NCBI RefSeq assembly: GCF_902652985.1
Contig: NC_047030.1
Location: 21,762,001 to 21,826,000 of the forward strand
Direction: 5' to 3'
Source of the DNA: Pecten maximus
Lineage: Eukaryota
DNA: 64,000 nt
Shown one piece after another: positions 2,922 through 52,324 of this stretch (positions are counted from its first letter, which is position 1; the number at the start of each line of letters is the position of its first letter). A program made the translations under genes and the position numbers. Below the pieces are notes generated by a model. The model worked only from the letters and a program-made list of their open reading frames with translations. It did no database searches and was not told the DNA's origin.

Positions 2922-2984
2922 TGGTCCACTACGTTACCTCACAGCGGCACTGGCCAACATTGTTACGTCACAGCGGATTCGGCC

Positions 2985-27800: not shown

Positions 27801-30800
27801 ATGTTTTTGTGAAGTATTCCTTAACCATTATTAGACCATCTAGAGTTACAACACCACCTGTTCATAGTGAGTATATTTCTTCCAACTTAAAAAAATATTT
27901 CCATAATGTATAAAAATACACAATCTTTAGGCATTCTTTTTTATCATTCATGAATCTTTTCTTTTTATTATCTTAAGACTTTATTCCTTGTGAAATTTAT
28001 GTAATTGTCATATTTGATGATTTTCAGGAGGTCCAGAAGAACAAGTTCCACAGCAGTACACCTCTTACCAACCAGGGATAGTGAACCTTGGCTATCCCAA
28101 TCAGGTAGGAAGCCTGGCTTTCCTTAAAACCTTTTCTTATAGTCATTCTATGGTCGATATTTAAAAAAAAAACAAAAAAAAACACAGCATACATATATAT
28201 CCACTTTGAATCAAAACTAGCATGAAATCATTATTTGCATTGGTTGAATGTAAATGGTCGTCCCTGGCAAAGTATTGCAAATGCAAGTTCAGAAGCTTTG
28301 GTAAGAAAACTTAGGTTCATGACAAAAGGGATATCTTTGTGACATTGATTTCCGATATCCATAGACTTCTGAAAATAACAAAACTAAAAAATTGATCTAC
28401 CTGGTATATAAGAAACTTGATTCATTTGTTAAATAAAGAAGTATTGCAGTAATGAAAATGTTAATTCTGTCTTATGCAAATACTTTGCTTTACAACCAAC
28501 TAAGTTTATGCCAGTATATTTTAATTGCTCTTAAGAGTTTTAATGAAATTTGAAAATTTATGTTTCAGTTCCTGATATCGCAACAGCAGCAGCAACCGCA
28601 GCAGCAGGCACAAAGTAATCCTCATGAATTAGACAAGGGTCAGCTGACCACATCCCAAACTTTTGGGGGACAGCGAACTCCAGTAACTATTCAACAAAAT
28701 ATGTATCAAAACCCTACGCCAGGCATGAGAGCTGGTCCCCCAGTAAGTAGAGTTGATTAGTTATACCTTTGTAGTATCATCTAGTGTTTATGTAACAGAA
28801 TAGTCTACAACTGTATGTTTTGTTGGATGATGAAGTTTTAAGACTAGCTCAACTTCCTCAATATCTGTTAATTTTGAAGTGAATACCCAAAAGTATGGCT
28901 TGAACAGGACGGTATCTGGTTGTCTGAGTATAACAGCTTAACTTGACACCAGCTCTTGTTAGCTCTGATTAAGAATATTGATTTTGATCAATATTGCATA
29001 TTCACAGACAAATTCAGTGGTTGGACGTAACCAAATTGAAACATGAACTGAAGACTGAATCATATTAACTGACCTGAATTGTACTGGCTTGGTTTCTTGA
29101 ATATTTGACTACTCCGCAGAATTATGTAGCCAATTGATGTTCCTTCATTGCAGCCCTTTTTCTCTGGCCAATCACAGCAACGGCAAACTAGGTATACTGG
29201 CCCTCCTCCCATCAGCCAGCCGCCAAACCAGGCTATGTACCCAGCGATGTACATGACGCCAAATCACCAACCAGGGACGTTCCAACCCCCTGGTGGTACA
29301 CAGATCATTGTTCAGCCACAACTTTCTATGATGGTAAGTTATGTTGTATTTATGTAGAAATGTAAAGTAGGGTATTACTTACTATAATATGAAGAGTTCT
29401 GGTTTTCCGTGTAGCGAATTTAAAATTGATAAAGCTTTGGCATGTACAGAAGTTTAACAGGGCATATTATTTTTAATGTGACCTCTATGTCTAAGGTTAT
29501 TTCCTACTTTTATGTTCTACCATAAGCAAAGGTATGATTAAACATATGTCATGATTTAATATTATGATTATTAGCAGGGGCTTTTTGGCACTGTTAATTG
29601 GCCCCACTCCCAATTGAAATTATTACATATTTAAGCCAATTTCCCAAAACTTTTAGTTTACTCCAGAGAAAACCTTTCCCGATTCACCAATTTTCTTCCC
29701 AAAATGAAGCAAAAAGGCCTGATTTATCATTGAAGATTCATAACAGATGAAATGTATACCTGCATGTCATCTTGACATAAGCTGTGACAAAGATGAAATA
29801 ATAATGCTTTTTCAATATCTTCAAATTGTGTACAAAGATTTCCTTTCTTTTTTGTCTAATAGAGTTTTACAACATGCCACTTCTTTGTTGTATAGCAGGT
29901 TGGTAACAGAATGAGTACCCCTCAGTTTGCCCTACAGACCTCACAACAAGGGATGACAGGGATGACCACCTACCCCATGGCTACAAATCAAACTGCAACT
30001 CAGCAGTTTAACCCGATTACTGTGTATCACCAGCAATCTAGCCAGAATCAGAGGCCACCATCGGCAGGCATGATTACACCACAAACAAATCAACAACAAG
30101 GAAAAAGAGAGAAACACATGATCAAGATTGTAGATCCAAATACTGGAAAAGATATATCAAGTGAAATATATAGCACCACAAATCGCCCAGGTCGTTCTAC
30201 TACGCCAGGTTCCAGTCCTTCCCCTGTGGCTGTAGCTCCGGGAGAGGCTGTATCAGAGTCAGAATCAAGTCCCCTTGTTGAAGTAAGCCATCTTTTGTAT
30301 AGTTCTAGCATTAATCTGAAGTTTCATTGTAAAAGTTATGATAAGCACTTTATAGTATCACCAATGTTAACCTAATTAAATCACCTTGGTACTTCATAAT
30401 CTGATTTTAGTGATTTTCTATGCAATAATTGCCCTAATAATGATCTGGCTGCAACCAAATCTCAATGAATGACAAATTTTGTTGAATGATAGTCATGGAT
30501 GATTGAAAATTGGTACAAATTTGTTGCATTAAACTATTCAAATCACACACTGTCTCTATCCATAAACAGTTCGTTTAAAGCTGATAGTTCATAAGTGCAG
30601 AGGTACCTCTATAGTTTTTCAACAAATTGTAAGATTGACTCGTGTCTTAAGAAAATATTTTGGAATGTACACCATATTTAGATAGGAATGACAACACTTT
30701 GGTTAGAACTATTTGTTAACATTTTATCACAATTTGTTGTGTGCATCCTAATGGAATTCTTATTTGCAATGTAATAATGTTGTTTTCAGAGCCCCCCACC

Positions 30801-33800
30801 ACCTCCATCAGAATCACCAAATGGTCACCAGGGTGATATTGCAGCAGTATTTGCTGCCCAGGTGGCTGCGACATTGAAGACTGAAATTCAAGCGGAACCT
30901 GGGTTGACTTCCAAACTTTCTCACAATGTGCCATCATTTACACCTGCAGAACAATATCAACCGCCGAGTGCTAGTAATGAGGAAATTACACAGGAATCGT
31001 ACTCACCAGTCGTGACCGAAGTTAGTGAATCAGACACTCCAGCCCTAAGTGCACCAGTTAAAGAAGCCACAACAACAGTTCTAGCTGAAGTTTCAGTAGA
31101 ATCTGGAAAAGTTTCAAATTCAGTACGTAGTGTAACAATAGAATCCAATCCAAGTCTTTCAAACACAAACGATTCAGTTCCAGCTACACAAGAAGAAACT
31201 GCACTTGTGTCAGATTCCGGCGTTGATGTCCAATCTGTGTCATCATTGGAGCCAAGTGACTCTTCAGTGGCCGATAATGTGAAACCAGATAGCCAGAATG
31301 TGGTTATAGTTGATGAAGTGGATACTCCCGTGGAACCACCAAAGCCTTCTGAAGTGGACTCTAAACCTGACAATGTGGCAACAACTGTCCAAAGTGATAA
31401 TGCAAGGACTAAGGATCTAGTAAATGATAAAGTGGAGTTGGAGGAAAAACTTGTAAATAATACCTCTAAACAGGAGGATTCAAGTGAGAAAGACAAGGTG
31501 CCAAATATATCACAAACAACTGTGGTAGATCATGAGGATTCCGGTCCTGTATCTAGTGTCAAAAAGGAAACCAAGGGAAAGAAAAAAGTCAAGGAAGTTA
31601 GCAAGAAAGGAGAAGAATCTAAAAAAGCTGATGTGGAGGTGTTCTTAGAGCCACAGGTTTGTATATCCTTATAGATCTGATATATTTTACTTCATGCATT
31701 CTTCTGTCTTGAGAGTTTTTGCAAGAGGAAGCAAGAATTTATCTAAATAACTCTAAGCTTACTAGTAACTTTCGACAACTGAATATATGTCGTCCACACA
31801 ATCTTGCATTCAAAGTTAAAACTTTTTATAACAAAGAGGTGCAGTCAATTAAAATTATTCAAAAGCTTTTTGAAAACTCTGGATGCCTGGGGTCATGTTA
31901 ATTTGGTGGTATTTCAGATTTTAAGGTTAATTTCCTTCATTTGCTTTAAAAGGTCAAAGCAGTCTGATATATGTAATGTTGGTATAAGTTTTGGTAATAT
32001 TCCAATATTCCATTCACATTCTGAATCTGAAAAAATTATATATGTACAATACTTTTTAGTTGCATGACTAGAAATTCAGCTAGATAAAATCTGATAAGTA
32101 TTGATATTATCTTGTATTGTAACAAATTCTGATTAGATGTTCTTGCTATTTTAATGAATTTGACTTTGCACTCAGACTCTGAAGCTTGCAAAAGTTTAAA
32201 ATGTGTAACGAGTCAATGGTAAAGGCCTTTTGGGCCTCTTTATTTTGATTGTCATTTCTAAATAAAATTAATGTATGGTTTTATCCTTTGAACTGTGTGG
32301 AAGTAGATTAATTTGCATTAATGGTATTGATGATTAATTTCACTATTAATTGACTATTCTGTTGTTTAACAACAGCCAGTGGAGTCACCAACACCTGTAC
32401 CAGAACCTGTACCAGAACCTGTCGTAGTTTCTCCTCCAGCAACAACAACAACAGAAACACAAGATGTCGAAAAAACTACAGAAAAACCAGAGAAAATGCA
32501 AGAAGTTGAAGTACAAATACAAGACAAAATACAGGAGGAGAATCAAAAGAATGAGGAAAAAAGTAAAGACGCTAAAGAAAATACTAAAAACAGTGAAAGT
32601 ACAGAAAAGGAGAAAGCTGTAAAAGAAGCCAGATATAAATATAAAGAAGGTAAATTCAATTGGAAAAAGAATAGTCACATTGAGAGGAAGCTGGTTTCCA
32701 CTGAGAATTACATAAATTTACTTTTGAGATTGGAACTGAAATACAATGTTGGTTATTATGTCATTGAATCTGATCAGGTTTAAGATGCAACGTGGAACAT
32801 ATATTTGTTCCACATCACATACCTGTAAATTTTGTAACCGTCCTACTGTTTTTAAAGTTTGTGTTAGTATATGTACATATATTTGAATTATATATACTGC
32901 TGCAAATTATATTTTGATTAACACCAAAACACAAATTTTTGTGATCATGACAACAAAATAAGGACATGTATTTCTGTATTAAGTATTGTGATAGGAAAGT
33001 TCCCATTCTAATCCATTTCAGTCATTTCTTGCAAAAGTTTTTCATATTTTCAAAAGTCTGGTCACTAGGCCTATCAACCTACAAACTGAGGACAGACTTC
33101 CTTATTTCAAAGTTTCGTAGGTAGTGGTTTAGATAGCAGCTGATTACAATACTCAGCTGAATCAGACTAAATATAACGTCACATTTTACATGGTGTAATT
33201 ATATGATTATATAAGGACTTAGCCATGCTTTACAGTGAAATTGGTATTCACATGCATGTGGCTGTTCATATTTCTTTGAATCTAAATTAATATATTTCTC
33301 AGAAAATGTCATATGAAAACAAGAGTAAGTTAAGAGTGCCCTCACTAGTAAAGCCATGCTGCAAGATCACAGGAGATGCACTGATTTAGAAGGAAATGTA
33401 TCCATTGTTAAAAAGTAGGCATGGTATTGTCTGGTCATTATTGCTTCGGCTTGGAAAAAGAAATGAATATTGTGCATATCTTGATTTCATACCACATTTT
33501 TCGTTACACTAATTTGGGCATTAAAGTTGAGATTGAATTCTTCTAAATTGTAATATTTAACAACCTGCTAAATCCAACCAGAAGTTTTCAAGGTTTTATT
33601 GATAGCACTCTGACACACTAACATGTGTAACAAGAGGTTTGAAGTGAGCTTGCTTAAATGACTTTGTATCAATCTAATGTGACAAAAATCGTAATATTGT
33701 AAATTTGTAATAAAGAAATTGTAATACATCAAAAAAATTGACTTTTTCCAGACCAATGGAGTCCTATGAATCCAGAAGGGAAGCGATTGTATGACCGTGA

Positions 33801-36800
33801 TTTCTTGCTGCAAATGCAGTATGCTGGAGACTCTACAACCAAGCCTGTTGGACTGCCAGATCTACCTGATATTATTCTAGACAAAGTAAGTTGATAATAC
33901 GATGGTTAACTACCAAGTCACTATCCCTTGCATTGAGTTGGATCGGAGACAGTATCCCTGTCATTCCAGGTGTTTTTGTTTGATGTCTGCATGAAAACCG
34001 TCCATGGAGGGTAATTGTACGATGTGCTTGTTTTACTTCATCATTAGCAGATTTTTAATCCATATTCATCAATATCATCAATATCTGGAATATCTGAAGT
34101 TTGTAGCCTCTTTTAGAGGAGATGATGATGTTTAAAACAGGGTAAGGGCTGTTCAAAATATTTATCCACTCTACTCTAGAAAGCATTCTAAGCATAGTGG
34201 TAGGGTTAGCACGGGCCTTGAGAAAGTCTTGAATTTCACCTTGGGGCTTGAAAAGCCTTGAATTTCACCTTGGGCCTTGAAAAGCCTTGAAAATTGGTTT
34301 ACAGCCTTGAAAAAGCCTTGAATATTAAGGTTTCATTAGGATAAGTGAAACCCTGGCCACTGATCATTTGGATTCAACTTTTTCTATGCCGCCTCCCTTA
34401 CAGACGTTAATAGTTACCATGTCAAGTTGTATTTTGATCAAGTGGATAGTTATAAGTTGCCTTTTTGTTCTCTTGTTCCCTCACAAGATGACGGGTAAAA
34501 TGGGCCTTGAATATTTAATTAAGACATTGAAAAAGCCTTGAATTTGGTTTGACAAAATCCGTATGAACCCTGAGTGGGAATGGGAGAAAATAGGCCTTAC
34601 ATGGTACTTTTGAGGTAAATAACTTGGTAGTTCCTAGTATGACAAACCTGGCATCATCTCACTGGATAGATATTTTACTTTAATAGTCCTTGATAACTTT
34701 AAGTAATCTTCTACTTTGGTCTCTACTATGATTTCCATTGTTGTTGTAGCCTCACTATAACCAGCCTTCAGGAGGTGGAGGTGGCGGCGGTGGTGGTGGG
34801 GGAGGAGGTGGAAGAGGACCCCCCTTTTCCCGGGACCCTCAATCATTCACTGGATCCTTTGACTTCACACCTGGCTATGTCAGGTCACCAAGAGTTGTGA
34901 GTACCTAACATTCTTAGTGATGTGTTAAGCACTTTTTTATAGGCAAAATAACATACCTTATCGGACCAGAAAACTACAAGAACAAAAAAGAGTACATGTA
35001 CTAAGATCCAGCACTATTGACCTTTGTTTTGCTGTCGGGCAGTTCTCTCTCTTTGCCATTCAAGTCTTTTTTCCTGCATATAAAACTGGTTGCACAAATC
35101 GACCTCATTCCCAATGCATTTCAGTTTTATTTTTCCCAAAAGAAATTTTAGAAAAATCACAATTGTGTCCAAAATACAGAAAAGTCTGGAAAAAAAGAAA
35201 TTATACTGGCAAATATTCCACAAAATAGACAAGAACAAAGGACAGCCAAAGATCAAAATTGGTGTGTGCCATCATGTAAAGCTAGAATTGATTCTGCATT
35301 ATAAAATTATAAGCATGCCACTCATAAATCAATTATTAGCATGAAAATTTAAGAAAAGGAATAGTGAAATTTTCCCAATTGGTCAATTGGATTTTCCCAA
35401 AATACTGGAAAAAACATCGCATTGAACAAAGGTTATGTTGGCTTCCTGAAACGAAAAAAAAGGTTTTGCTTTTGGTGAATATGTAAATATACTGACATGC
35501 TAGATATGGTGAGATTTAATACTTTAGCCGAAACTGACAATTTGAAATAAAAGTTTGTTTTTGTGATGCAGGTGATATTGCTGGAAGTGTTTCAGTGACA
35601 TTAAAGCTACAAGGTACTAGAAGTGATAATTTTAGTGGCATTGTAAAGTTACAATATATTTTTGTGATTCAGGGCGGTGCTGATCGTGGTGGTGGCAGAA
35701 TGACCAAGAGTGGTAGCAACCAGGGCCGCAAAATGGGTGGTCCTCCTCAGAGGATCATCACCCATGTTTCCATAGGACAGGATGTCACCCTACACAAAGC
35801 AGGCGATGCTTGGAAACCACAAAAGAGCACAGAAAAAGTTGAAGATCCAGAAGACAAAAAGACTGAGGTAAAAAACAATGGCTGTTCTAAGGTTCAAAAT
35901 GTTCTTGTACTCGAGTTAGGGTCTGAGATAGCTCAGTCAGTTAGAACTCCAACCATGTAGCCTTCAATGAAGATCCGAGGTGTTTGGCTAGACGCTCTCT
36001 AATTGTGTTGTATCTGGGCTCAAAATTATGTTTGTTCCTAATCTTGGGACACTGTCGGTTAAACTTGTTATGTTTCCCCTTCGAATGAAGGGAGAGAAAT
36101 TGTATTTGTACTGGGTTCTACTTTTTTCTGGTTCTTCTACTAATAAGAAGTTCTTGTCCAGGCCATAACTTCTGAAGTGTTGGAAGATATTTTTATGAAA
36201 CTTGGAGCGTACTTGCATCGCCTAAAACATATGGTTATGTCACTTTGACCTTAACTTCAAGGTCATAGATTTGCAAATTTAACATTAAATTTTTGTCCAG
36301 GCTTAAAGGTCCAAAGGTCATTTGAGTGCAAAAATATTACTCCTTGTTTTGTTGCAGGTATTGTACAAAAAGGCCAGAGGTATCCTTAACAAGCTGACTC
36401 CACAGAAATTTCAAACTCTGGTCAAACAGATGTCAGAACTAGAGATCGATACAGAGGAGAGATTGAAGGGAGTCACAGATCATGTCTTTGAAAAGGTAAC
36501 AAAAAAATCATCACTTTTTGTCATTTTTGGATATGGATGACATGATCTATAGCTAGAGATACTTAAGAAATCAGTTTCTCCATCTTTTGCGAACAAGTTG
36601 AAGAATATTCCATTTTCTAACACATTAAGTCTATAAATAAGGCTCTATGTATTTCAGTTTGTTATTAAAATGATGTTTTACTTTCAGGCTGTCGGTGAAC
36701 CTGGATTTAGTGTAGCTTATGCAAGCATGTGCAGATATCTAGCAATGGTATGTATCATTGATTTATACAAGTCATAAAATCAGAAATCTTACCTTTACAT

Positions 36801-39800
36801 ATACCAATTTCTTCAGTCTTTAACAAAATAGAAACAGTCACCACAATCTTTCAACTGGCATTTGAGTTAATGATTGATTGAACCAGAAAGTTTGATGAAT
36901 ATTCCTTTTAAAAGCGTTTGATGAATGTCTTACTAAGTGAGAAAAAGGGAGGATAGTCTGATTGCAGGTGACGAGAATCAAGTTATAAGAAGAACGCAAG
37001 TAAACTTTGTGGTATTATTGTGCAGATGAAAATGTCAATTGGTTGTCATTTACTTTCAGATCAAGGTACCTTCCCAAAAAAAGCCAGGTGAATCTGTCAA
37101 TTTCCGTGCAATATTACTTACCAGATGTCAAAAAGAGTTTGAGAAGGACAAAGACACAGAACAGGAAATGGAAAGGAGGCGGAAAGAAATCAAGGAGGCC
37201 AAGGTTTGTGTTTTAAAAGGACTGAATAATCTTTTATTAACTCTTGATCCGCTGGCAGAGGGAAATCACATGTGTGCTGATTTTACTGTCTCCCACGGCT
37301 GGTGAGAGATCTGCCTCGATGAAATACCAAAAATTGATTTATAAGGTTGTCTCCGGCATCACATGTTAGAAATCAAGATTTTCAGGCTTATTGGAAATAA
37401 GGTAATAAAATGTGACATGTTTCATAGACAACTTAAGTGACGGAATATACCTTGATATGATAAATTAGACCACACTTAAAATTTGAAATAAAAGTTGTAA
37501 AGATACAGCAATATTATGTGTTAATAAATGACTGGGTATAAGGGAGATCATTAGATTACATGAAGGGCATTCAGTTGAACAGATGATTATGGGAGGAGAA
37601 AAATTCAAGGAAAATATTAATTCAGAAACTTGCTGACCTAGATCCTCTAGACTCATAATGATTCTTGCTGTTTATCCAAAGGTGTTTGATCAAGGACTCC
37701 AAAATTTGTATTTTTCTTCTCAATATGCGATATTAACAATGGTGTTTTATATGCAGGAGGAGGAGAAAGATCAGTTGAAGTCCGATCTAGAATTTGCGGA
37801 ATCTAAAGCCAGGAGACGGTCTTTAGGAAATATTAGGTATGATGTTCTTGTAGTAAACAAATTAATTGAGTGTCGCAATCATCAGCAATAAGATGAAAAT
37901 ATTTATGGAGATTAATTCAGATTTTGCATTAATGCCAATATACTTTGTTATAGAAAGATATGTGTATTTACATACCTTATGCATACCTGTACGCATTTAA
38001 ATACGTTCTCAAGTAAAAAAGTATTTTTGTCATTTTTTGTTTTGTATAAAATACAGTTAAAAGTTTGATATAACTGCTGTATTTTGTTCTCAAATGTAAG
38101 AATTCATAAATGTATTTTTGTTTTACCATACAAAATAAATTACTAATTCTGTGTTTTGTTTTGTCATTTCAGGTTTATTGGTGAATTATTTAAATTGAAA
38201 ATGTTGACCGAGAACATTATGCATGACTGTGTATTTAAATTGCTCAAAGCCAAAGATTTAGAATCGCTGGAGTGCCTGTGTCGTCTTCTCACTACCATCG
38301 GAAAAGAATTGGATTCAGATAAAGCCAAGGTAACCATGAGTTTTCAGATCTACTTAAAAAGGGAGATAAGAATAGTGCTAAAAATTATGAAATAAACTGA
38401 AAGTTAAAGGATAACTACAGCTTGACTGTATAAATTTTGAAATTTTATCTACTTCTGCTGGTTAATTGACCTACTTCCTGTTGAAGATTTTGTCGGAATA
38501 AAGGATGGAATGTTTGAGATAGTGAAGGTTTGACTTCAAGATGTTGATAGATCCAGAAGAGACTAGGTCAGGCAATAATTTTATTCCATGAATTTCTCTT
38601 TCTACAGCCAAGGATGGAGCAGTACTTCCAACAAATGGGAAAGATTTCACAAGACAAGAAGACGTCCTCCCGAGTGAGATTCATGTTACAAGATGTGATC
38701 GAATTGAGAATGGTAAGGTCCACACAGAAATGCAAAAACTAAATTAATTTTCAACTGTCTGAATATGAAAATTGAAAGTTTTAAATGATATATTAAGTAA
38801 TATATCCATCCTTGTGTTCTTTTGCTAGAAATAGACATTAACTGATCAATTAAATTCTCTTAGGGCTATCAAAGTAAGATATTTACAAAACAGAGACCAC
38901 CCATAGAAGTGATTTAATTCAAACAGTGCTACTATAATAGGCTGCATTTTCTCCAGCACCATGCATAGAATTTCTTTATTTCTGTATTCCTCCCTTTTGA
39001 TATTTTCCTGCAATAGTCAAGTTGTGATTACTCATTTAAATGGGTTGAAAACAAGTGTGTGCCGCAAATGTAATAAAGAATCCATTCATTAGAGTGGCTT
39101 TCCAGTCACAACATGAAACATTCTTCAATTAACCATTTACTAATGCCAATAAGGGAGATAAAATTAACACTGGTAATCATGTTATTGAAACAAGTACAAA
39201 TAATGTTAAGGAAACAAAGTTTTTTGAAAGATAAGATGGGTAAATTTTGTATTGCTTACATGTAAAGCTCAGGAAATGTGCATTTCTCTGTAGACTACAT
39301 ACACGAGTACTTTAATGAACTAGGATGAAATTATGCAAATCAAAACAACCCAAGTCTCCAGATAACTACTAAGATCCAAGTCTTAAATGATAACAACTGA
39401 AATGGAAACAAAACATACCTGAACACACTAGGGAAAAGCATATCCAGTGTTTCTGGTCACCAGAATACTATAAAGATAAGCACAGCAGTTTATATCATTA
39501 AATTTAATCGCTTCAGAATCGCTGGGTACCAAGAAGGGATGAAAACAACCCTAAAACTCTGGACCAGATTCATAAAGAAGCTCAGAGAGAGGATCAAGAA
39601 AGACAACTCTTAGCTCAGCAGGCAGTCGCCCAACAGAGAGAGCAGCGAGGTGGAGGTGGCGGCGGCGGTGGATCTAAGGGTTAGTTTATTTGCAGCAAAA
39701 TCAACCCAAATATCGAGATGTAACAGCAGCTTTATGCTGTATGTTGTGTTCATTGTGACATTATTTATGAGAAAATTTAATATTTTGAATCAACACAGAC

Positions 39801-42800
39801 CAATGATGAAGGAAAGTTATCCCTGTCTTAGTGAACAAGATGCTGACTCTTTCCTCGTTACTGAGGCTGTGCTATTGTCTTCTGGTCATACTAAAAGCAT
39901 TCAGTGATTATACAGGCATTCACATTTACATTTAAAACTTGGGCTATGTCTGGTGTTCACATCTGCTCAAAAATTTGCTAGTCACATTGGACAAATTTAT
40001 TTGAATAATTTATATACAAGACAATGACTGTTCTATTGTGCAGCCATTTTATCACCAAGTAGCAGTATTTTATTGAGTAAATTGATTTTTCTGTTGCACG
40101 ATCTGTATATAGTACTATGTGCCAGTATTTTATACTGAGAAATTTCAGACTTAGTGAATTTATATCTTATAATTTTACAGGTGGATAATTAATGTGAATT
40201 TCTCCTGTCTATTTATTTCACAGGAGGTGGAAGACGTGGGCCTGGTTCACAGGGTGGCCCTCCCGGAGGTGCTGATGGCTGGGCCACAGTTGGTGGGAGA
40301 CAGCCACCTGTCCGAATCAACGCAGAACGTCAAACTATTGATCCATCAAGGCTAAAACTTTCTCGGGTAAGGAAAATGGGAGGAAAAAAATCATAAAGAA
40401 TATGCATTAATTGCCCAATGATTTCCCTCCAGGTAAATGACTGAAGAAAATAACTTTTAAGTAACTGTGTTTTTTGCTCTGAACATTCACTAGCCAACTA
40501 CAAAGAGCAGAAGAAATGTGATGAGTTCATATTCTCTAGTGTACATTCATATAAAGACTTAATATACTTGTCTAATCAACATCAATTTGTGTCAACAGCA
40601 AAATGTGGATGAAAGTGTACAGCTTGGTCCTGGTGGTGGTGCTGGAAGGTTCGCTGGATGGCAGAGGGGAAGCACAGGTGGAGGAGCTAGAGCTTCTCAA
40701 GAGGCCGAACGTTCGTCCAATGCACCAAGCAACAGGTAACTACTGCAAAGGGTTTTCGTATAATGGAAAGATACAAATTTCAGAACTCTGTAGAGATAAT
40801 GTTGGATGATTTTTCACCTGGTAACACTAATAAAGCTGTATGTTGAATTTAAAGCTCAGTTTTGTGACTAAAACCAATGATGAAGAAAAGTTATCCCTGT
40901 CTCAGTTAACAATGCCGACACTTTTCTAATTACTGAGGTTTTTTCAGTCGCATTTGAGATAAATTCAAGAAATTTAGCATTGAAACATCAGTAAACCTGT
41001 TGTTATTCAAAATAATAGTAAAGTAGTAATTAGGATTTTCAAAATAATAGCATAGTAGTAATTAGGAGCAAAAATGGATGTTATCTAAAATATATTTGAT
41101 AAACTATCCTGGGTACTATTGGGGTTCAATCAGACTACTTTGACAACACTACTATATAGATATTCTTGGAGGCAGTTAAAGAATAAAATACATAATTCAG
41201 ATTGTTTTCCTGAGAAAGCAACCCAATATCTCGCCCAGACTCCCATTTAACCCACTTTCAATCGTAAAGATTGCTCCAGGGGGCCAGGGTGGTCGAGTGG
41301 TTAAGGTGTCCCGACACTTTATCACTAGCCCTCCACCTCTGGGTCGCAAGTTTGAAACCCACGTTGGGCAGTTGACTGGTACTGACTATAGGCCGGTGGT
41401 TTTTCTACGGGTACTCTGGCTCTCCTCCACCTCCAAAACCTTCCTTAAATGACCCTGGCTGTTATTAGAACATTTAACAAAATTATTCTGTTTAAAAACT
41501 AAAGTGAAATATAATTAAATTCCCTGGTTTATGTTTGACTGTCATAGCCTATGATGAAGAAAAGTTATCCCTGTCTCAGTTTACAAGATGCCGACTCTTT
41601 CCTCGTTACTGAGGCTTCATCAGTCTTATAACAAAATCAGGGAATCCTGCTATGGCAAATACACAGTGTAAGTGAGTGGAGTAGTTAGAAATTCTTAATT
41701 CATAAATTCTTATAGTTTGAAAATTTATTGCTAGAATCCTACTCTACCTGGAAATTCATACAGAAAACCAATAAACCACTGGTTTGTGAAACTCCATGTG
41801 AAACTCCATGCTTGCAAAATGCGAGCATTTCTTTTCTGGAATCCATGCAACCAAACCCGACTCCAACCAACTGCATCATGCAATATTGCTTCCTTTAAAA
41901 GTATGAGATAAAATATTAATGTTTATGTGGATTTAGTTTCTATACAATACCCTGATGAAAGCCAATGATGAAGAAAAGTTATCCCTGTCTTAGTTTACAA
42001 GATGCCGACTCTTTCCTCGTTACTGAGGCTTCATCAGTTCTATGATAATTACAGGGAATCCTGCTATGGGAATTATACGGTGTAATCGAGTGAAGTAGCT
42101 AGAAATTCTCAAATCATAAATTCTTACAGTTTGAAAATTTATTGCTAGAGTCCTATTCTGCCTTGAACCTCGAATAGAAATCAATAAACCACTGGTTTGT
42201 GATAACTCGCTCTGTTTGCGAAATATGAGCATTTCTTTTCTGGAATACATGCAGTCAAACCCAACTCAAACCAACTGCATCATGCAATATTGCTTCCTAA
42301 TTTAAACATTTCATTTAAAAAGACCATATAAGATATTAATGTTTCTGTGTATTCAGTTTCTATACAATAATACCCTGATGAAAGCCAATGATGAAGAAAA
42401 GTTATCCCTGTCTCAGTGTACAAGATGCCGACTCTTTCCTCGTTACTGAGGCTTCATCAGTTCTGTGATAATTAGGGGGAATCCTGCTATGGGAATTATA
42501 CGGTGTAATCGAGTGAAGTAGCTAGAAATTCTCAAATCATAAATTCTTACACTACAGTTTTGAAATTTATTGCCAGAGTCCTGTTCTGCCTTGAACCTCG
42601 AATAGAAATCAATAAACCACTGGTTTAACTCTTTTTGCGAAATATGAGCATTTCTTTTCTGGAATCGATGTGAAGTATGAGAATTTCCTTTCAGAAATCC
42701 ATGCAAACAAACCCAGCTCGAACTAACTGTCGTGCAATATTGCTTCCTTTAAAAATATGAGATGAAATGTTAATGTTTCTGTGTATTTAGTTTCTATACA

Positions 42801-45800
42801 ATACCCTGATGAAAGCCAATGATGAAGAAAAGTTATCCCTGTCTTAGTTTACAAGATGCCAACTCTTTCCTCGTTACTGAGGCTTCATCAGTTCTATGAT
42901 AATTAGGGGGAATCCTGCTATGGGAATTATACGGTGTAATCGAGTGAAGTAGCTAGAAATTCTCAAATCATAAATTCTTACAGTTTTGAAATTTATTGCC
43001 AGAGTCCTGTTCTGCCTTGAACCTCAGTAGAAATCAATAAACCACTGGTTTAACTCTTTGCGAAATTTGAGCGTTTCTTTTCTGGAATCGATGTGAAGTA
43101 TGAGAATTTCCTTTCAGAAATCCATGCAAACAAACCCAGCTCGAACTAACTGTCGTGCAATATTGCTTCCTTTAAAAATATGAGATGAAATGTTAATGTT
43201 TCTGTGTATTTAGTTTCTATACAATACCCTGATGAAAGCCAATGATGAAGAAAAGTTATCCCTGTCTTAGTTTACAAGATGCCGACTCTTTCCTCGTTAC
43301 TGAGGCTTCATCAGACTTTGTTAATACTATCATGATCTGGATATGACTAAGTATAACTGCTTATTTAACAATTTAGATATTATAAAATCCAACTAATATT
43401 TTTATGATATTTATTCAAGTTGGCATTAGCAGTAAATCATATGAAAAAGCCAATAAATGTTTAAAATATTTTCATAAAAAATACTCTTTATTCTTCCCCA
43501 GCATTGATGTAATAAGCTATGAGAAATATAATATAATTAAGAATAATAAAACACATTTCTGAGCTTTTTCTCACTGGTTTGGGAAGGGTCTTTTTTGTCT
43601 CATTTTGGGAAGAAAATTGGTGAATTGGGAAAGACTTTTTCAGGAGTAAACTCCAAAATTTAGGAATTAGGCTTAAATATGAGTGCGAGATGAGTGTAAA
43701 TGATATAAAGATGCACAGAATAAAAGTTATTATTGAGGCAGTTGTGTTAAATATACAACAGAAATAATGTGAAAGTCTTTGATCTAGAAACAAGGAAATA
43801 TTAAGTGTCCAACACCATTCAAGAATTTACAGTTTTGTGATTAGACTACTGGAATGTAAGATTAATATTGATATGTCAGTTTATTATAGCTATTGCAATT
43901 TTTTGCAAAGCTTACAAGATACATATAAAGTCTTTTATTTCAAGATGTTAGGCTAGTGGTATTGTATATATCTTTTAAATTACGAAAGGCGACATATCAA
44001 ATACAAATTGTAAATACTGATGGGCAACAGATGAAATACAGAACATGTCCTGACTGAAGCCAATGATGAAGAAAAGTTATCCCTGTCTCAGTGTACAAGA
44101 TGCCGACTCTTTCCTCGTTACTGAGGCTTCAGTCTTTGTTAATACTAAACATGGTCTTGATCGACCAGAAATCCATTTTCCCTATGTTGTGTATAGATAC
44201 TAGAAAAGAAATCTGAATCTTGAGATTTTTTTATGTATGTTCTGCCTTGATTTAAGTCTTCAGATATTTTGAAGTATGTTCTGTCTTAACTTTGCCTAAA
44301 CATAATTTTGATGAATTGTAAATATTTGCTACATTCAATATAACATATTTTAGCTTCAGATGTTGGTTTAGTGAAATAACATATTACCTTACTAAATAAT
44401 GAAGGATGGAACATCTGATAAAACATCATGAAAGTCTGACTGAAGCCAATGATGAAGAAAAGTTATCCCTGTCTTAGTTTACAAGATGCCGACTCTTTCC
44501 TCGTTACTGAGGCTTCGTCAGTCTTTGTTAATACTAAACATGGTGTAGATAAAACTAGATAAAACTTTTCTGTGGTAGATATTGAATTTCATAATTAAGG
44601 TCATGATTTTCTTTTGTTTTCTTTTAGAAATTTTGATTTTTCTTTTAATTTTGAAATTAAGGTACTTTAATTTCAAATTTTTCAATAAGATTTACGTGTC
44701 TATAGAATTTCACAATTTGTGTGGCAGGTTTTCAGCATTGAGCCGATCGGAAGACGAGAGCAGAAGTCGTCTTGGTGCAAGTCCCAACAGAGTAAGACAA
44801 CAGCCTGGAAGCTTTGGTCGTCCAAACAGGGTAACGCCACGATCATCACAGGAACAGGAGAGGGAGAAGGCACTCGCTGCAGCAAGGTAACAAATTCAAT
44901 CATGTGTAAACATTTGTTTCGATAGTGATGTAATGTCACATATTCAGAATTCAAAATTTACTGAAGAAATTTGCAGTTAACCAAACAAATGTTTCAGATG
45001 CTTTTAAACCAGGGATCATTTTACTGATGAACAAATTTTCATTTTACAGGAGCATAATTGGTGGTCAAACCACTCCAAAAGAAGGCCCTAGTCGGGAAAG
45101 CAGTCGAAGCCGTGAAGTACGCGAGGAGAAGAAAGAACCAGCACCAGTGGCTCCCCCTGCCCCTGTCAAGGAGCTGGGCCAGGAGGAGATGGAAAAGAAA
45201 ACGATCTCCATAGTGGACGAGTTCCTTCATATACAAGACATGAACGTATGTGTATTTGTATGCAAAAGTGATTAATTTCTAAATTAGGTTTTCAATTGAA
45301 ACTCTTAAAGCTGACTGAAGCCGATTATGAAAATCTGTCTCAGTTTACAAGATGCTGACACTTTCCTCGTTGCTGAGGCCTATCAGTTACTGGTTAACGT
45401 CTACAATGTAGTTTTTATGTTGAATTATTTCAATAATCGGGTAATGAAACAAAGGTATCGTAAATGTTCTTAAGTAAAATAGATAGTTGGTCACTTAACA
45501 CAAAAGTATGCAATGTAATCTGCACTCAATACTGAAAAAAAGTTGCATTTTTGTTTCTTTTGCAGGAAGCTGTTATGTGTGTAGAGGAATTAAATTCCCC
45601 ATCAACGCTACATTTGTTTGTGAGTTCTGCCCTAAACCATGTCCTAGAGAGATCGGAAGTTGCTCGTCGGCAAACTGGACTGCTTCTCCATGACTTGGTC
45701 AGGAAAGGATCTGTTCCGGTGGCAGTTTACATTAATGGGTAAATGTTTTCATATTTCTCAAAAATTGGATGTAGTAACAATAGAAAAATGTACCTGTTCC

Positions 45801-48750
45801 TTTAAAAAGAATGACTTCTCCAGTAAAACAGCTAGAAACAATCCATTTAACTTTTTTTCGCTTTATTTACAGGCTACATGAAATCCTTCAGTATGCAGAG
45901 GATATGGAAATAGACATTCCAAAGATCTGGCAGTATTTTGGAGAACTAATTGGACCTATGATTCAAGATGGCAGTGTTCCATTTAGTTTCCTTAAAGATG
46001 CCATTGAGCCTCTTAAAGCCAGCCACAAAGCTTGTGTTCTAATTGCTGCAATCCTACATGATGCCAGTAAACGAGAGGTAAGATATAAGTGGTGTTAAAG
46101 TATATACAATTAATCTTTGAAATGATCAAAATCAATTTAAACACATTGTTTTCTGTAAAACATACTTGAAGACAAATTATTTTGTATTAGATATACGAAG
46201 ACTTCAGTTAAGTTCTTAGCAAATCTTCACATTGTAAACACATTGTTCTCTGTAAAAACACTACTTGAAGACAAATTATTTGTATTGGATATACGAAAAC
46301 TTCAGTTAAGTTCTTAGCGAATCTTCACATTGTAGTGAGCAAATATGCTCTGATTGGTCAAATGTTTCTGAACTGAAGTTGAAACAAATCTCACAGAATT
46401 CTAATAAGGTCAGATGTTTCTTTGAAATAAACATGCACAAATTGGTTTCACTTCACTGGCAATATACTGATAATCAAAATGAAGCCCCAGTTTACAACTG
46501 AATTGATGAATACTCGTCTCTACTTTCAGGGACACAAGAAAATTGCATCCATTTGGAAGAGCTCTGGTTTAAAATGGAGTGACTTCATGCCAGCTGAAGA
46601 AGTGAAAACCTTCCTGAGTACCAATGTAAGTATTTGTGCTGTTCGAATCGATGATCACCAATATTTATATCCACCGCAACAGGGGGGGGGGTTACACTGG
46701 AAGCAGGTTATCCATTTCGTTCTGTCACAGGATTTTCTCCAGTTAATCTACAATTTTCATGAAATCTTGCTGGTAAACATTCCTCAGAATCTTGGATATG
46801 ATTGTTCAGTGACTTCTGAATCTAAAACCTATATTGCACTTCAGAAATAACATTGCGGTTAAGAAAGTCCCCAAAATGGAATATATTGGTGGAAACCTAG
46901 TATTTGCTAATCAATTAGAAGTTATGGAAAGTATTTAACCAATAAGTTAGAAGTTATTGAAAGTTTTTACCTATCAATTATAATTGAAAGTATTTACCCA
47001 ATTAGTTTTAGTTAGAAGTTATGGAAAATATTAACCAACCAAATAGAAGTTATGAAAGTATTTACCAAACAGTTAGAAGTTAGAGAAAGTATTTACTAAT
47101 CAATAATGGGGAAATGTGATATGACAATCATTAAGTTTTTCAATCAACTATAAGTGCACGATATTGTGTGTTATAACCTGATTTTATTTCATTTTAAAAT
47201 AATGACATTTTATTGCAGAGTTTGGATTTCACCGAGCCAGATGGCAGCCAGCCTACCACCCCCACTATAGCAATGCCCCTGGAGAGTATACAGGAAAACC
47301 TGGACATGCTCTTACAGGAGAAAAAGTCTACTAATGAGGATATCTTTGATTGGATTGAGGTCAGTATATAACACAGGGACACTACATAATGTTAACACCA
47401 TTGAGATGCAACCTAGCAATAGATTGAGTCATGTAGGTGATAAACTAGTAACTAAAATCTATGTATTGAACTTATTTTGATGGAGTAATATGATGAGATA
47501 TTAAACATTAATTTATCTTTATTTACAGACAAATTTGGATGACCCAATCACGAAATCAAAGCGTTTTATCCGTGTGCTGATGACAGCAGTGTGTTCATGT
47601 GCAATTACAGGTGAGGCTCAAGTTTGCGTTTTCTTCGCTAAACTAAGTTTGATAATCTTTCTTTTCAAAATAATTGTTTGTGCACATCTTGAGGTAGCTA
47701 CAAAGTTGCACAAAAAATAGACTGCCTTTTGTAGCATTCCTTAAAAACATTCTAGTATATTTGCTGTGATGCCGGATATTTTTGTTCATAAAAGTTCAAA
47801 TCCTTAAGTACAATAATGCTTGAAAAAAGGTGGAGTCATACATACATACATATCATAAAAAATCGGTAACATGATATCTACATGAATGATTTACCTTGAG
47901 TTCCATAATTTAGAGATCAAATTAAAAATGCTCATGCCAGTGACATTGTTTTGATTGGTTTGCAGGTCGTGGAAGCAGTGCTCGCGTGGAGCCTCGTGAT
48001 GTCATTAACCGTGGTGCATTATTACAGAAGTACCTTGATCATCAGGCCGAGTTCGAGTTACAAGCACTTTATGCTCTTCAATCACTAGTCCACAAACTTG
48101 AGCATCCGCCAGGTCAGTTATCTAATACAAGGGAAACTTGAAAACGATTTTCCTATAGTATCAATTATTGTTTGACGCTTAATCTTATTACATTACATTA
48201 ACTTGAGGCGGATTTTCAGAGCTCTGCATCCTTATGAGAAATATTTCTGAATTTGAATATTCCTGTGTAACTGATGACTTCTGATGATTGTGTGTTAACT
48301 TGAATAAAAAAAGTTCAGATGTATTACTTCAGACAAATGTATGTTGACTTATTAAAAAGACAAGCACTTAAAAAGTATTACTTCTAATAGATATAATATC
48401 ATAATCTTTGTTTTCAAACTAGGCCAGCCCTTTGAAAGGAACTAGATTAAGCTGTATGGGTTTTGTTGGGGTCATATTCTCTACAAGATCTCGATGATAT
48501 TTATATATGGTAAGGGCACATTGAGGGGTTTCTTTAATATTGATTAAAACAAAATTTGTCTTTATTTGCAGGTGTACTACGGACATTGTTTGATACACTT
48601 TATGATGAGGACATAATATCTGAAGATGCGTTTAACCAATGGGAAAAGAGTGAGGATCCCGCTGAGCAGGAAGGCAAGGGAGTGGCTATGCGTCAAGTTG
48701 TCCAGTTCTTCACGTGGCTACGAGAGGCTGAGGAGACTAGTGATAGCTGA
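24804..48750 (+). CDS. EIF4G: Eukaryotic translation initiation factor 4 gamma (eIF4G1/3-type), ~1682 aa, 29 coding exons
   Basis: Phase-consistent GT-AG exon chain totalling 5049 nt: 24804-24880, 27835-27866, 28028-28104, 28569-28742, 29154-29333, 29896-30282, 30790-31656, 32376-32649, 33752-33885, 34750-34896, 35673-35867, 36358-36495, 36688-36747, 37060-37203, 37757-37836, 38173-38329, 38608-38712, 39517-39679, 40224-40366, 40599-40735, 44728-44886, 45050-45245, 45566-45738, 45873-46077, 46530-46625, 47219-47359, 47529-47610, 47966-48112, 48572-48750. Motifs: PABP-binding [22 protein letters not shown]; eIF4E-binding YDRDFLL; MIF4G ([48 protein letters not shown]); MA3; W2 ending [14 protein letters not shown]. 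The first three exons are the least certain. Confidence 0.96.
24881..27834 (+). other. U12-type (minor spliceosome) GT-AG intron of eIF4G
   Basis: 5' site GTATCCTTT; branch site TTCCTTAAC at 27817-27825 ending 9 nt before the 3' end (AG 27833-27834); splicing preserves the reading frame. Confidence 0.85.
29575..29721. mobile_element. MITE fragment; related copy on the opposite strand at ~43558-43680
   Basis: Shared core TTTCCC(G/A)ATTCACCAATTTTCTTCCCAAAATGA. Confidence 0.55.
34201..34572. mobile_element. Non-autonomous DNA transposon with 5-bp TSD
   Basis: TIR TAGGGTTAGCACGG / CCGTATGAACCCTG; subterminal GCCTTGA repeats; AGTGG on both flanks (34196-34200, 34573-34577). Confidence 0.75.
39799..39868 (+). 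ncRNA. snR38: Box C/D snoRNA copy 1 (snR38/SNORD1-like), alone in intron 39680-40223
   Basis: C box ATGATGA 39803; guide AGTTATCCCTGT plus D' CTTA; C' ATGCTGA; guide TTTCCTCGTTA plus D box CTGA 39861-39864; terminal stem. Confidence 0.85.
40873..40940 (+). ncRNA. snR38: Box C/D snoRNA copy 2 (D' guide intact, D guide degenerate)
   Basis: ATGATGA 40877; AGTTATCCCTGT-CTCA; D guide changed to CTTTTCTAATTA; CTGA 40933-40936; stem AAAACC/GGTTTT. Confidence 0.75.
41281..41480 (+). mobile_element. tRNA-derived SINE (V-domain-like core) between snoRNA copies 2 and 3
   Basis: A box GGTCGAGTGG; B box GTTTGAAACC; core GGTTTTTCTACGGGTACTCTGGCTCTCCTCC; homologous to 57126-57343. Confidence 0.85.
41547..41616 (+). 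ncRNA. snR38: Box C/D snoRNA copy 3
   Basis: ATGATGA 41551; both guides intact; CTGA 41609-41612; stem AGCC/GGCT. Confidence 0.85.
41961..42030 (+). ncRNA. snR38: Box C/D snoRNA copy 4
   Basis: ATGATGA 41965; both guides; CTGA 42023-42026; stem CTGATGAAAGCC/GGCTTCATCAG. Confidence 0.85.
42384..42453 (+). ncRNA. snR38: Box C/D snoRNA copy 5
   Basis: ATGATGA 42388; both guides; CTGA 42446-42449; same long stem as copy 4. Confidence 0.85.
42815..42884 (+). ncRNA. snR38: Box C/D snoRNA copy 6
   Basis: ATGATGA 42819; both guides; C' variant ATGCCAA; CTGA 42877-42880. Confidence 0.8.
43238..43307 (+). ncRNA. snR38: Box C/D snoRNA copy 7
   Basis: ATGATGA 43242; both guides; CTGA 43300-43303. Confidence 0.85.
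44059..44128 (+). ncRNA. snR38: Box C/D snoRNA copy 8
   Basis: ATGATGA 44063; both guides; CTGA 44121-44124; perfect 10-bp stem GACTGAAGCC/GGCTTCAGTC. Confidence 0.85.
44445..44514 (+). ncRNA. snR38: Box C/D snoRNA copy 9
   Basis: ATGATGA 44449; both guides; CTGA 44507-44510; terminal stem. Confidence 0.85.
45320..45380 (+). pseudogene. Degenerate snoRNA copy 10 (C box ATTATGA, 28S guide deleted, D guide kept) in intron 45246-45565
   Basis: GACTGAAGCCGATTATGAAAATCTGTCTCAGTTTACAAGATGCTGACACTTTCCTCGTTGCTGAGGC aligns to the other copies with an internal deletion. Confidence 0.7.
46139..46334. repeat. ~98-bp local tandem duplication
   Basis: AAACACATTGTT..AATCTTCACATTGTA occurs twice. Confidence 0.85.
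46910..47105. repeat. Degenerate ~32-bp minisatellite
   Basis: TTAGAAGTTATGGAAAGTATTTA recurs about six times. Confidence 0.75.
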
Positions 48751-52315: not shown

Positions 52316-52324
52316 AAAACCAAA

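What the first reader, a model, noticed from the sequence alone, without database searches (positions are those of the whole stretch)
40736..44727. Eight box C/D snoRNAs in one eIF4G intron: a satellite-like snoRNA amplification (10 copies in the gene)
Seen: a ~62-nt module (C box ATGATGA, guide, D', C', guide, D box CTGA, closing stem) occurs 8 times in this intron and once each in introns 39680-40223 and 45246-45565. Copies 3-7 form a ~420-bp tandem array. Copies 1, 8 and 9 keep the module nearly unchanged although their flanks have diverged, which suggests selection on the RNA. Known: translation-factor genes commonly host snoRNAs, but vertebrate intronic snoRNAs are normally one per intron and released by exonucleolytic trimming; polycistronic clusters (plants, yeast) need endonucleolytic cuts. 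Inference: this is an intronic polycistronic cluster of a single guide, amplified for dosage and needing a mechanism to separate the copies. The long terminal stems (10-12 bp) fit splicing-independent assembly.
Basis: partly seen in the sequence, partly recalled or inferred. Interest (0 to 1): 0.88.

Follow-up and report, generated by a model that had tools for sequence, protein, structure and literature searches.

The report
Eight snoRNA copies in one scallop intron
One intron of a scallop's eIF4G gene carries eight well-preserved copies of an ancient small RNA that guides a methyl mark on ribosomal RNA. This packing is unusual for an animal, but it is of a known kind and common in this genome.

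Summary
The eIF4G gene carries nine intact copies and one decayed copy of a 62-nt box C/D core. Eight copies lie in the single intron 40736-44727, and five of those form a tandem array of about 423 bp per unit.

- **Family:** Rfam calls them snoR38 (the yeast snR38 family).
- **Target:** the D' guide pairs 12/12 with this genome's own 28S rRNA, at the G equivalent to yeast Gm2815.
- **Uniqueness:** this is the only locus of this guide in the 918-Mb genome.
- **Selection:** the boxes and guide never vary among the nine intact copies. The array spacers are 13-23% diverged, and the flanks of the dispersed copies no longer align. Every intact copy keeps a 7-13 bp outer stem built from different letters. 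The tenth copy has decayed.
- **Host:** a pectinid scallop, not a vertebrate.
- **Other arrays:** I found several copies per intron elsewhere in this genome: four SNORD18 in one RPL4 intron and three SNORD36 in one RPL7A intron. The scan had already noted similar arrays on other DNA of this genome (PABPN1, KANSL2, CK2alpha).

So this is a new, large example of the known "intronic snoRNA cluster", made by local duplication. It is not a genome-wide satellite.

How the interior copies are separated is still inference. The options are endonuclease cuts or a long sno-lncRNA.

The parts
39794..39871 (+). Copy 1: intact snoR38-type C/D snoRNA (core 39803-39864), alone in intron 39680-40223
   Evidence: Rfam 38.6 bits. 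Own model 96 bits. 7-bp outer stem, -10.1 kcal/mol. Core 57-58/62 identical to copies 3-9 and 52/60 to copy 2, with unalignable flanks.
40869..40943 (+). Copy 2: intact, the first copy in the large intron (core 40877-40936, 60 nt); its box-D guide has diverged
   Evidence: Rfam 46.1 bits, above the cut-off. 13 paired bases in the outer stem. D' guide and boxes unchanged, with 4 changes in the D guide.
41543..41619 (+). Copy 3: first unit of the tandem array (core 41551-41612)
   Evidence: Rfam 39.6 bits. Its downstream spacer is homologous to those of copies 4-6; its upstream flank is not. The outer stem has a 4x4 internal loop.
41957..42033 (+). Copy 4: array unit (core 41965-42026)
   Evidence: Rfam 44 bits. 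Core identical to copies 7 and 9. 11-bp outer stem, -16.7 kcal/mol.
42380..42456 (+). Copy 5: array unit (core 42388-42449)
   Evidence: Rfam 41.6 bits. Core identical to copy 8.
42811..42887 (+). Copy 6: array unit (core 42819-42880), with a private G-to-A change in the C' box
   Evidence: Rfam 40 bits; alignments.
43234..43310 (+). Copy 7: last unit of the array (core 43242-43303)
   Evidence: Rfam 44 bits. The TRF array ends at 43314.
44055..44131 (+). Copy 8: dispersed copy in the same intron (core 44063-44124)
   Evidence: Rfam 46.7 bits, above the cut-off. 10-bp perfect outer stem, -19.7 kcal/mol.
44441..44517 (+). Copy 9: last copy in the large intron (core 44449-44510), about 210 nt upstream of the 3' splice site
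   Evidence: Rfam 47.5 bits, above the cut-off. Outer stem -19.4 kcal/mol.
45312..45387 (+). Copy 10: decayed copy (pseudogene) in intron 45246-45565
   Evidence: C box reads ATTATGA and 9 nt of the D' guide are deleted. No terminal stem in the fold, z -0.7. Own model 63 bits, against 96-119 for the others.
41543..43314 (+). Tandem array: five snoRNA copies separated by four spacers of about 340 bp
   Evidence: TRF period 423, 86% matches. Spacers differ by 1.3-23%. The spacer sequence occurs only here in the genome.
40736..44727 (+). Host intron of eIF4G (GT...AG, 3992 nt) holding copies 2-9
   Evidence: Splice sites read directly. The flanking exons are contiguous in the Argopecten eIF4G3-like protein.
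29911..48750 (+). Host gene: eIF4G (MIF4G, MA3 and W2 domains), approximate extent within the window
   Evidence: Pfam hits on single exons. Closest named proteins are mollusc eIF4G3-like.

Best explanation
This is the scallop's gene family for the snR38/snoR38 box C/D snoRNA. Its D' guide directs fibrillarin to 2'-O-methylate one G in the conserved ACAGGGAUAAC stretch of 28S rRNA, here LSU position 3097, which corresponds to yeast 25S Gm2815.

The whole family sits in three introns of eIF4G: nine intact copies and one dead copy. It grew by repeated local (cis) duplication. The older copies (1, 2, 8, 9, 10) have lost all flank similarity. Copies 3-7 are a younger, still-growing tandem array made by unequal crossing-over.

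Each intact copy is kept by selection on its boxes, guide and stem pairing. This implies that each copy yields a working snoRNP.

Inferred, not shown:
1. The copies are transcribed with the eIF4G pre-mRNA.
2. The 7-13 bp outer stems bring boxes C and D together, so snoRNPs assemble wherever the copy sits in the intron.
3. The spacers are then cut by an endonuclease and trimmed back to each protected snoRNP, giving monomers of about 75-85 nt.

Several copies per intron is the usual layout for C/D snoRNAs in this genome, so the pathway would be a general one in this animal.
For: **Identity**
- Rfam assigns all nine copies to snoR38.
- Canonical C box (AUGAUGA) and D box (CUGA) in all nine.
- The D' guide pairs 12/12 Watson-Crick with the genome's own LSU rRNA at 3093-3104. 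It scores 24, against 13 for the next-best site.
- Yeast snR38 guides 25S Gm2815 (PMC5699541).
- The chicken homologue also uses the 5' guide, over 11 nt (PMC2653536).

**Sole locus**
- The sequence pattern, the Rfam model and my own model find only these copies in 918 Mb.

**Selection**
- 0 of 23 columns vary in the C box, D' duplex and D box, against 12 of 39 in the rest of the core (p = 0.002).
- In the array, 3 of 62 core columns vary against 81 of 301 spacer columns (p = 3e-5).
- Flanks of copies 1, 2, 8 and 9 do not align to the array flanks (z about 0), while cores are 84-100% identical, lowest for copy 2.
- The stem letters differ among copies, but pairing is kept in every one.
- Copy 10 shows what decay looks like.

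**One intron:**

**Local duplication:** the spacer is unique to the array, and unit divergence grades from 1.3% to 23%.

**Genome-wide habit**
- RPL4 intron with SNORD18 x4.
- RPL7A intron with SNORD36 x3.

**Precedent for endonucleolytic release:** yeast snR38 and U18 are excised from their host introns by RNase III (Rnt1p) together with Nop1p/fibrillarin (PMC3867540).
Against: - No expression, RNA-end or methylation data could be examined.
- Six of the nine copies score below Rfam's gathering cut-off (38.6-44 against 45 bits).
- The D' box is degenerate (CUUA or CUCA).
- Copies 5 and 6 lie in spacers only 1.3% diverged, yet differ at 3 core sites, and copy 5 equals copy 8. This points to gene conversion, which could account for part of the core's uniformity without selection on every copy.
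- No conserved cleavage signal was identified in the spacers.
- In mammals, two snoRNAs in one intron give a sno-lncRNA rather than two monomers (PMC11028025).
- Orthologous introns in other molluscs could not be fetched.
Confidence: 0.7

Rival explanations
1. sno-lncRNA. After splicing and debranching, exonucleases stop at the outermost assembled snoRNPs. The intron then yields one or several long RNAs capped by snoRNPs at both ends, up to about 3.65 kb from copy 2 to copy 9. Interior copies stay tethered rather than being released as monomers.
For: This is the described outcome when two snoRNAs share an intron in mammals (PMC11028025). No conserved endonuclease signal was seen in the spacers. 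All the prerequisites are present: several snoRNAs in one intron, each with a strong stem.
Against: Interior copies keep their guide and boxes perfectly. That is hard to explain if they never act as free guides. The spacers evolve fast (13-23%), so the long RNA's body is not conserved. The same layout recurs in ribosomal-protein genes for housekeeping guides that must be abundant.
Confidence: 0.15
2. Only a few copies are productive, for example those nearest an intron end. The interior array is a neutral by-product of unequal crossing-over, and its uniformity comes from youth and gene conversion, not from selection on each copy.
For: Copies 5 and 6 are recent: their spacers differ by only 1.3%. 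Identical cores sit in unrelated flanks (copy 5 = copy 8; copies 4 = 7 = 9), which suggests conversion. Copy 10 shows that copies can die.
Against: Array units 3, 4 and 5/6 differ by 13-23% in their spacers but by at most 3% in the core. Variation inside the core avoids exactly the boxes and the D' duplex. Copies 1 and 2 carry private changes, so they are not being homogenised, yet they keep boxes, guide and a stem.
Confidence: 0.1
3. Each copy sits in its own intron of unannotated alternative transcripts, with small non-coding exons between copies, as in UHG/GAS5 or SNORD116 host genes. The ordinary one-per-intron exonucleolytic route would then suffice.
For: A polypyrimidine-CAG motif lies about 90-100 nt downstream of copies 4-6, and a TAG version follows copy 3. 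That is near the classical distance from a snoRNA to a 3' splice site (read).
Against: No conserved 5' splice site follows that motif. A GTAAGT is present only in unit 3, and it lies upstream of the CAG. The scallop eIF4G protein model joins the two flanking exons directly. The RPL4 and RPL7A arrays also lie between exons that are contiguous in the protein.
Confidence: 0.04
4. Assembly artefact: the array is an over-expansion of one or two real copies.
For: None directly. Reads could not be examined.
Against: The units differ by 1.3-23% and by unit-specific indels. A duplicated-assembly artefact would give identical units. Similar arrays occur at independent loci.
Confidence: 0.01

Closest known systems
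snR38 (yeast) / snoR38Y (plants) / snR38A-C (human) / GGgCD64 (chicken): Rfam RF00213
   Same: Same box C/D architecture. Same D' (5') guide core, GUUAUCCCUGU. Same target G in the conserved ACAGGGAUAAC stretch of LSU rRNA. Also intron-hosted in a translation-factor gene: yeast snR38 is excised from a host intron. From memory, that gene is TEF4.
   Different: Yeast and chicken have one copy in one intron. Here there are nine intact copies, eight of them in one intron. The RNA is shorter than the model (13 consensus positions missing between the C box and the guide). The D' box is degenerate. Six copies score just under the Rfam cut-off.
Intronic snoRNA gene clusters (rice, Liang et al. 2002; Drosophila intronic H/ACA clusters)
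   Same: Several snoRNAs sit inside one spliceosomal intron of a host gene, on the host's strand (for the literature; here).
   Different: This one is in a mollusc, is box C/D, has all copies of a single guide family, and is partly a regular 423-bp tandem array. The silkworm follows one-per-intron, and the reviews call that rule predominant in animals.
sno-lncRNAs (two snoRNAs in one intron protecting the sequence between them)
   Same: The prerequisite anatomy is present: more than one snoRNA per intron, each with a strong terminal stem.
   Different: There are eight snoRNAs rather than two. No evidence exists for a stable long RNA, and the spacers are not conserved.
Tandem C/D snoRNA arrays SNORD115/SNORD116 (mammalian imprinted loci) and UHG/GAS5-type hosts
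   Same: Many copies of a C/D snoRNA arranged in tandem within one transcription unit.
   Different: Those arrays place one snoRNA per intron, with small exons between copies, in non-coding hosts, and many are orphans. Here no exons separate the copies, the host codes for eIF4G, and the guide has a canonical rRNA target.
Rnt1p/Nop1p-dependent release of U18 and snR38 from yeast introns; polycistronic snoRNA processing in yeast and plants
   Same: An endonuclease route that frees a snoRNA from flanking RNA independently of exonucleolytic trimming from the intron ends. It is documented for the yeast homologue of this very snoRNA.
   Different: No comparable pathway has been shown in animals for intronic clusters. 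The stems here lack any identified recognition loop. This is an analogy only.

Membership tests
Box C/D snoRNA, snR38/snoR38 family (RF00213) | C box RUGAUGA near the 5' end and D box CUGA near the 3' end | tested here: met
   AUGAUGA and CUGA are invariant in all nine intact copies.
Box C/D snoRNA, snR38/snoR38 family (RF00213) | A terminal stem that brings boxes C and D together | tested here: met
   7-13 paired bases in every intact copy. Duplex energies are -10 to -19.7 kcal/mol, against -3.4 +/- 2.5 for controls; folds.
Box C/D snoRNA, snR38/snoR38 family (RF00213) | Covariance-model score at or above the family's gathering cut-off (45 bits) | tested here: inconclusive
   Three copies score 46.1-47.5 bits and six score 38.6-44 bits. 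snoR38 is the top family for all nine.
Box C/D snoRNA, snR38/snoR38 family (RF00213) | A guide upstream of D' complementary to LSU rRNA, with the fifth paired base at the G equivalent to yeast Gm2815 | tested here: met
   12/12 Watson-Crick pairs with the genome's own LSU at 3093-3104, fifth position G3097 in ACAGGGAUAAC. Yeast site from PMC5699541. The positional equivalence rests on the shared guide in the Rfam consensus and on memory of the yeast sequence.
Box C/D snoRNA, snR38/snoR38 family (RF00213) | Accumulates as a small RNA of about 70-90 nt bound by fibrillarin, and the target is methylated | not testable with these tools
No RiboMeth data.
Intronic snoRNA gene cluster | Two or more snoRNA genes within one spliceosomal intron, on the sense strand of the host | tested here: met
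   Eight copies lie between exons that are contiguous in the scallop eIF4G protein. All are on the + strand, as is the gene.
Intronic snoRNA gene cluster | All members are processed to mature monomers from the intron | not testable with these tools
   No RNA data. Selection on the interior copies is indirect support only.
sno-lncRNA | A stable long RNA ending in snoRNAs at both ends | not testable with these tools
   Only the anatomy is present.
Satellite DNA | A head-to-tail repeat family present in long arrays or at many loci | tested here: not met
   The array has only four spacers, and the 336-bp spacer matches nothing else in 918 Mb.

The most novel reading that the evidence does not exclude
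Scallops, and perhaps bivalves generally, routinely mature many identical snoRNAs from a single intron. This would require an animal endonuclease pathway for intronic polycistronic pre-snoRNAs that standard vertebrate models do not use. It could resemble the RNase III-fibrillarin release of yeast snR38 and U18. The unusually long outer stems would be its substrates or its assembly platforms.
Probability: 0.3. Interest if true: 0.65.

Novelty: new member of a known kind. Interest (0 to 1): 0.45.

Why it matters
In vertebrates, the textbook route for an intronic snoRNA works because there is one snoRNA per intron: splicing, debranching, then trimming from both ends. An intron with eight selected copies cannot be fully resolved that way. 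So this locus, together with the RPL4 and RPL7A arrays in the same genome, offers a natural system for two questions. How does an animal separate intronic polycistronic snoRNAs? And do multi-snoRNP long RNAs form?

It also documents snoRNA gene organisation in molluscs, for which I found no published survey. Finally, it gives a clean example of cis-duplication with selection that can be read directly from the contrast between core and spacer divergence.

Tried and rejected
Neither expression nor the assembly could be checked against reads.
The orthologous introns of Argopecten, oyster, abalone and octopus could not be fetched.
- **The spliced eIF4G protein was not joined.** Exons were searched one by one by reference, and the joined step was left out.
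- **Metagenome scans.** The scallop-specific 25-mer found nothing. A looser 19-mer found two contigs with no snoRNA signal, which I take as chance matches.
- **Literature.** I found no paper on bivalve snoRNA organisation. The single "snoRNA" hit in an Antarctic scallop repeat paper was only a software citation. Giorgi et al. 2001 is not held.
- **Satellite or transposon carrier: rejected.** The spacer is unique to the array.
- **Dispersed or retroposed copies elsewhere: rejected**.
- **tRNA gene in the intron: rejected**. The tRNA-like stretch is a SINE-type repeat.
- **A fixed-column covariation count of the outer stem was not run.** Bulges shift the pairing register between copies, so I used per-copy duplex energies instead.
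- **Second (box D) guide: left open.** There are two middling candidates, LSU G2667 (12 bp with 2 G-U pairs) and SSU G1582 (9 bp, all Watson-Crick). Neither stands clear of the background.

Full report
**What is there**

A 23-nt pattern covering the C box and the first guide occurs nine times in the window. All hits are on the + strand, and none is expected by chance. The C boxes start at 39803, 40877, 41551, 41965, 42388, 42819, 43242, 44063 and 44449. Each core, from C box to D box, is 62 nt (60 nt in copy 2).

A tenth copy lies at about 45312-45387. It has a broken C box (ATTATGA) and has lost 9 nt of the guide. It no longer folds with a terminal stem.

Copies 3-7 are spaced 414, 423, 431 and 423 bp apart. 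Tandem Repeats Finder reports a 423-bp period over 41823-43314.

**What kind of RNA**

Rfam assigns all nine copies to snoR38 (RF00213). Three score above the gathering cut-off of 45 bits (47.5, 46.7, 46.1), and six score 38.6-44 bits.

I took one rDNA unit from this genome. The 12 nt upstream of the D' box pair perfectly with LSU rRNA positions 3093-3104. The fifth paired base is G3097, in ACAGGGAUAAC. The next-best rRNA site scores about half as well.

Yeast snR38 guides 25S Gm2815 (PMC5699541). The chicken homologue of snR38/snoR38Y/human snR38A-C also uses its 5' guide, over 11 nt (PMC2653536).

The second guide, upstream of box D, has two middling candidates: LSU G2667 (12 bp with two G-U pairs) and SSU G1582 (9 bp, all Watson-Crick). 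Neither stands out, and copy 2 has lost both. The 18S match exists, but it is not decisive.

**Host and intron**

Single exons carry MIF4G, MA3 and W2 domains, which is the eIF4G architecture. A search with one MA3 exon found mollusc eIF4G proteins. The closest is the Argopecten eIF4G3-like protein, so the animal is a pectinid scallop. From memory, the assembly size and contig number match the king scallop assembly. I did not verify this.

The exons on either side of 40736-44727 map to residues 1162-1207 (100% identity) and 1208-1259 (96%) of that protein. The stretch is therefore one intron with no constitutive exon inside it.

The spliced protein was not joined. Exons were searched separately by reference.

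**Is it the only locus, and is it a satellite?**

The sequence pattern, a looser gapped pattern, the Rfam model and my own covariance model built from the nine copies find only these ten places in the 918-Mb genome. The 336-bp array spacer matches only the four spacers of the array.

So this is a local cis-duplication. It is not a dispersed repeat, a retroposed snoRNA or a genome-wide satellite.

**Selection**

- **Array, core against spacer.** Spacers of units 3, 4 and 5/6 differ by 13-23%, while the 62-nt cores differ by 1.6-3%. That is 3 of 62 variable core columns against 81 of 301 spacer columns (p = 3e-5).
- **Dispersed copies.** The flanks of copies 1, 2, 8 and 9 do not align to the array flanks (z about 0), while their cores are 84-100% identical to the array cores, lowest for copy 2.
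- **Within the core.** None of the 23 columns in the C box, D' duplex and D box varies. Twelve of the other 39 columns do (p = 0.002).
- **Outer stems.** The letters vary in 19 of 24 columns, yet every copy keeps 7-13 paired bases at -10 to -19.7 kcal/mol. Random intronic sites of the same geometry give -3.4 +/- 2.5 kcal/mol.
- **Copy 10** shows what an unselected copy looks like.

One wrinkle remains. Units 5 and 6 differ by only 1.3% in their spacers but at 3 core sites. The core of copy 5 equals that of copy 8, and copies 4, 7 and 9 are identical to each other. This suggests some short-tract gene conversion among copies. Conversion cannot explain copies 1 and 2, which carry private changes but keep boxes, guide and stem.

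**Context in this genome**

Reviews do call that rule predominant in animals. They also describe intronic clusters (PMC11028025). Drosophila has intronic H/ACA clusters, rice has intronic clusters, and the silkworm follows one-per-intron (PMC3089462).

In this scallop, clustered copies are common.

| Family | Layout |
|---|---|
| SNORD14 | 5 copies within 10 kb |
| SNORD18 | 4 Rfam hits within 2 kb; three of them, plus a further copy seen in the sequence, lie in one RPL4 intron |
| SNORD36 | 3 copies within 1 kb, all in one RPL7A intron |

- **RPL4.** The exons flanking the SNORD18 copies at L017 2392, 2886, about 3084 and 3407 map to uL4 residues 183-227 and 226-264, so no exon lies between them.
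- **RPL7A.** The exons flanking the three SNORD36 copies cover positions 11-46 and 43-85 of the L7Ae profile.

Earlier notes of this scan report similar arrays in PABPN1, KANSL2 and CK2alpha of this genome. I did not revisit those loci.

The eIF4G array is thus the largest example I checked of a general layout, not an isolated oddity. I found no paper describing snoRNA organisation in bivalves.

**Mechanism**

Shown:
- a canonical C/D snoRNA family with a canonical rRNA target;
- eight selected copies in one intron;
- strong outer stems;
- local duplication of graded age.

Inferred:
- The copies are co-transcribed with eIF4G.
- The long stems let snoRNPs assemble wherever the copy lies. Copies sit 210 nt to 3.8 kb from the 3' splice site, far from the ~70-80 nt that, from memory, favours splicing-coupled assembly in vertebrates.
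- The spacers are cut and trimmed to give monomers.

The closest documented precedent for the cutting step is the yeast homologue itself. snR38 and U18 are excised from their host introns by RNase III (Rnt1p) with Nop1p/fibrillarin (PMC3867540).

The main rival is a snoRNP-capped long RNA (sno-lncRNA), which is what two snoRNAs in one mammalian intron produce. Selection on the interior copies and the fast-evolving spacers argue against it, but they do not exclude it.

A UHG-like solution with hidden exons between copies is unlikely. A pyrimidine-CAG motif follows copies 4-6 at about 90-100 nt, but no conserved donor site follows it.

An assembly artefact is very unlikely, because the units differ by substitutions and indels. 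It could not be checked against reads.

**Limits**

- Two metagenome scans gave nothing useful.

**Verdict**

The "vertebrate rule" framing, the "satellite" label and the count of ten equal copies need correction. The processing mechanism is untested.

This is a new and large member of the known class of intronic snoRNA clusters, in a phylum where the class had not been described. It is of moderate interest, mainly as a tractable system for studying how an animal resolves many snoRNAs from one intron.

Noticed in passing
window 41280-41470: A dispersed repeat of about 195 bp with a tRNA-like head (SINE-type) is inserted between snoRNA copies 2 and 3. At least 40 scored copies at about 89% identity, and some 3000 first-look candidates, occur across the genome. 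ARAGORN calls no tRNA here.
   Followed up: partly
L017 (G000:C9:13921500-13926500), about 2121-3655: One RPL4 intron holds four SNORD18 copies (2392, 2886, about 3084, 3407), with a fifth copy in the preceding intron (1496). The flanking exons map to contiguous uL4 residues. These copies have only short terminal stems of 3-4 bp.
   Followed up: partly
L018 (G000:C2:25467500-25471500), minus strand, about 426-2609: One RPL7A intron holds three SNORD36 copies (69-72 bits). Their outer stems are extended and differ in sequence between copies.
   Followed up: partly
L019 (G000:C2:40737000-40746999): Four SNORD14 copies sit in this locus, with a fifth just beyond its end, together with SNORD79, snR60/Z15 and a weak SNORD26 hit. 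It looks like a multi-snoRNA host gene. The exon structure was not examined.
   Followed up: no
window 41599-41612 and the equivalent stretch in copies 1 and 4-9: The box-D guide (14 nt) has two middling rRNA matches: LSU G2667 (12 bp, 2 G-U pairs) and SSU G1582 (9 bp Watson-Crick, in GAACGAGGAA). Copy 2 has lost both. This bears on the separate note about a dual guide.
   Followed up: partly
window 42388-42449 against 42819-42880 and 44063-44124: Copies 5 and 6 sit in spacers that differ by only 1.3%, yet differ at 3 of 62 core sites. The core of copy 5 is identical to that of the distant copy 8. This is a hint of short-tract gene conversion between copies.
   Followed up: partly
window 56537-56675 and 2800-2910: Hairpin-like stretches give sub-threshold matches to plant or animal miRNA families on both strands (63.5 bits against a cut-off of 101; 43 against 74). 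They are probably palindromic repeats rather than miRNAs.
   Followed up: no
window 52300-53950: A run of short, near-identical ORFs repeats every 155-310 bp on both strands downstream of eIF4G. This indicates a tandem repeat, seen in the ORF list.
   Followed up: no
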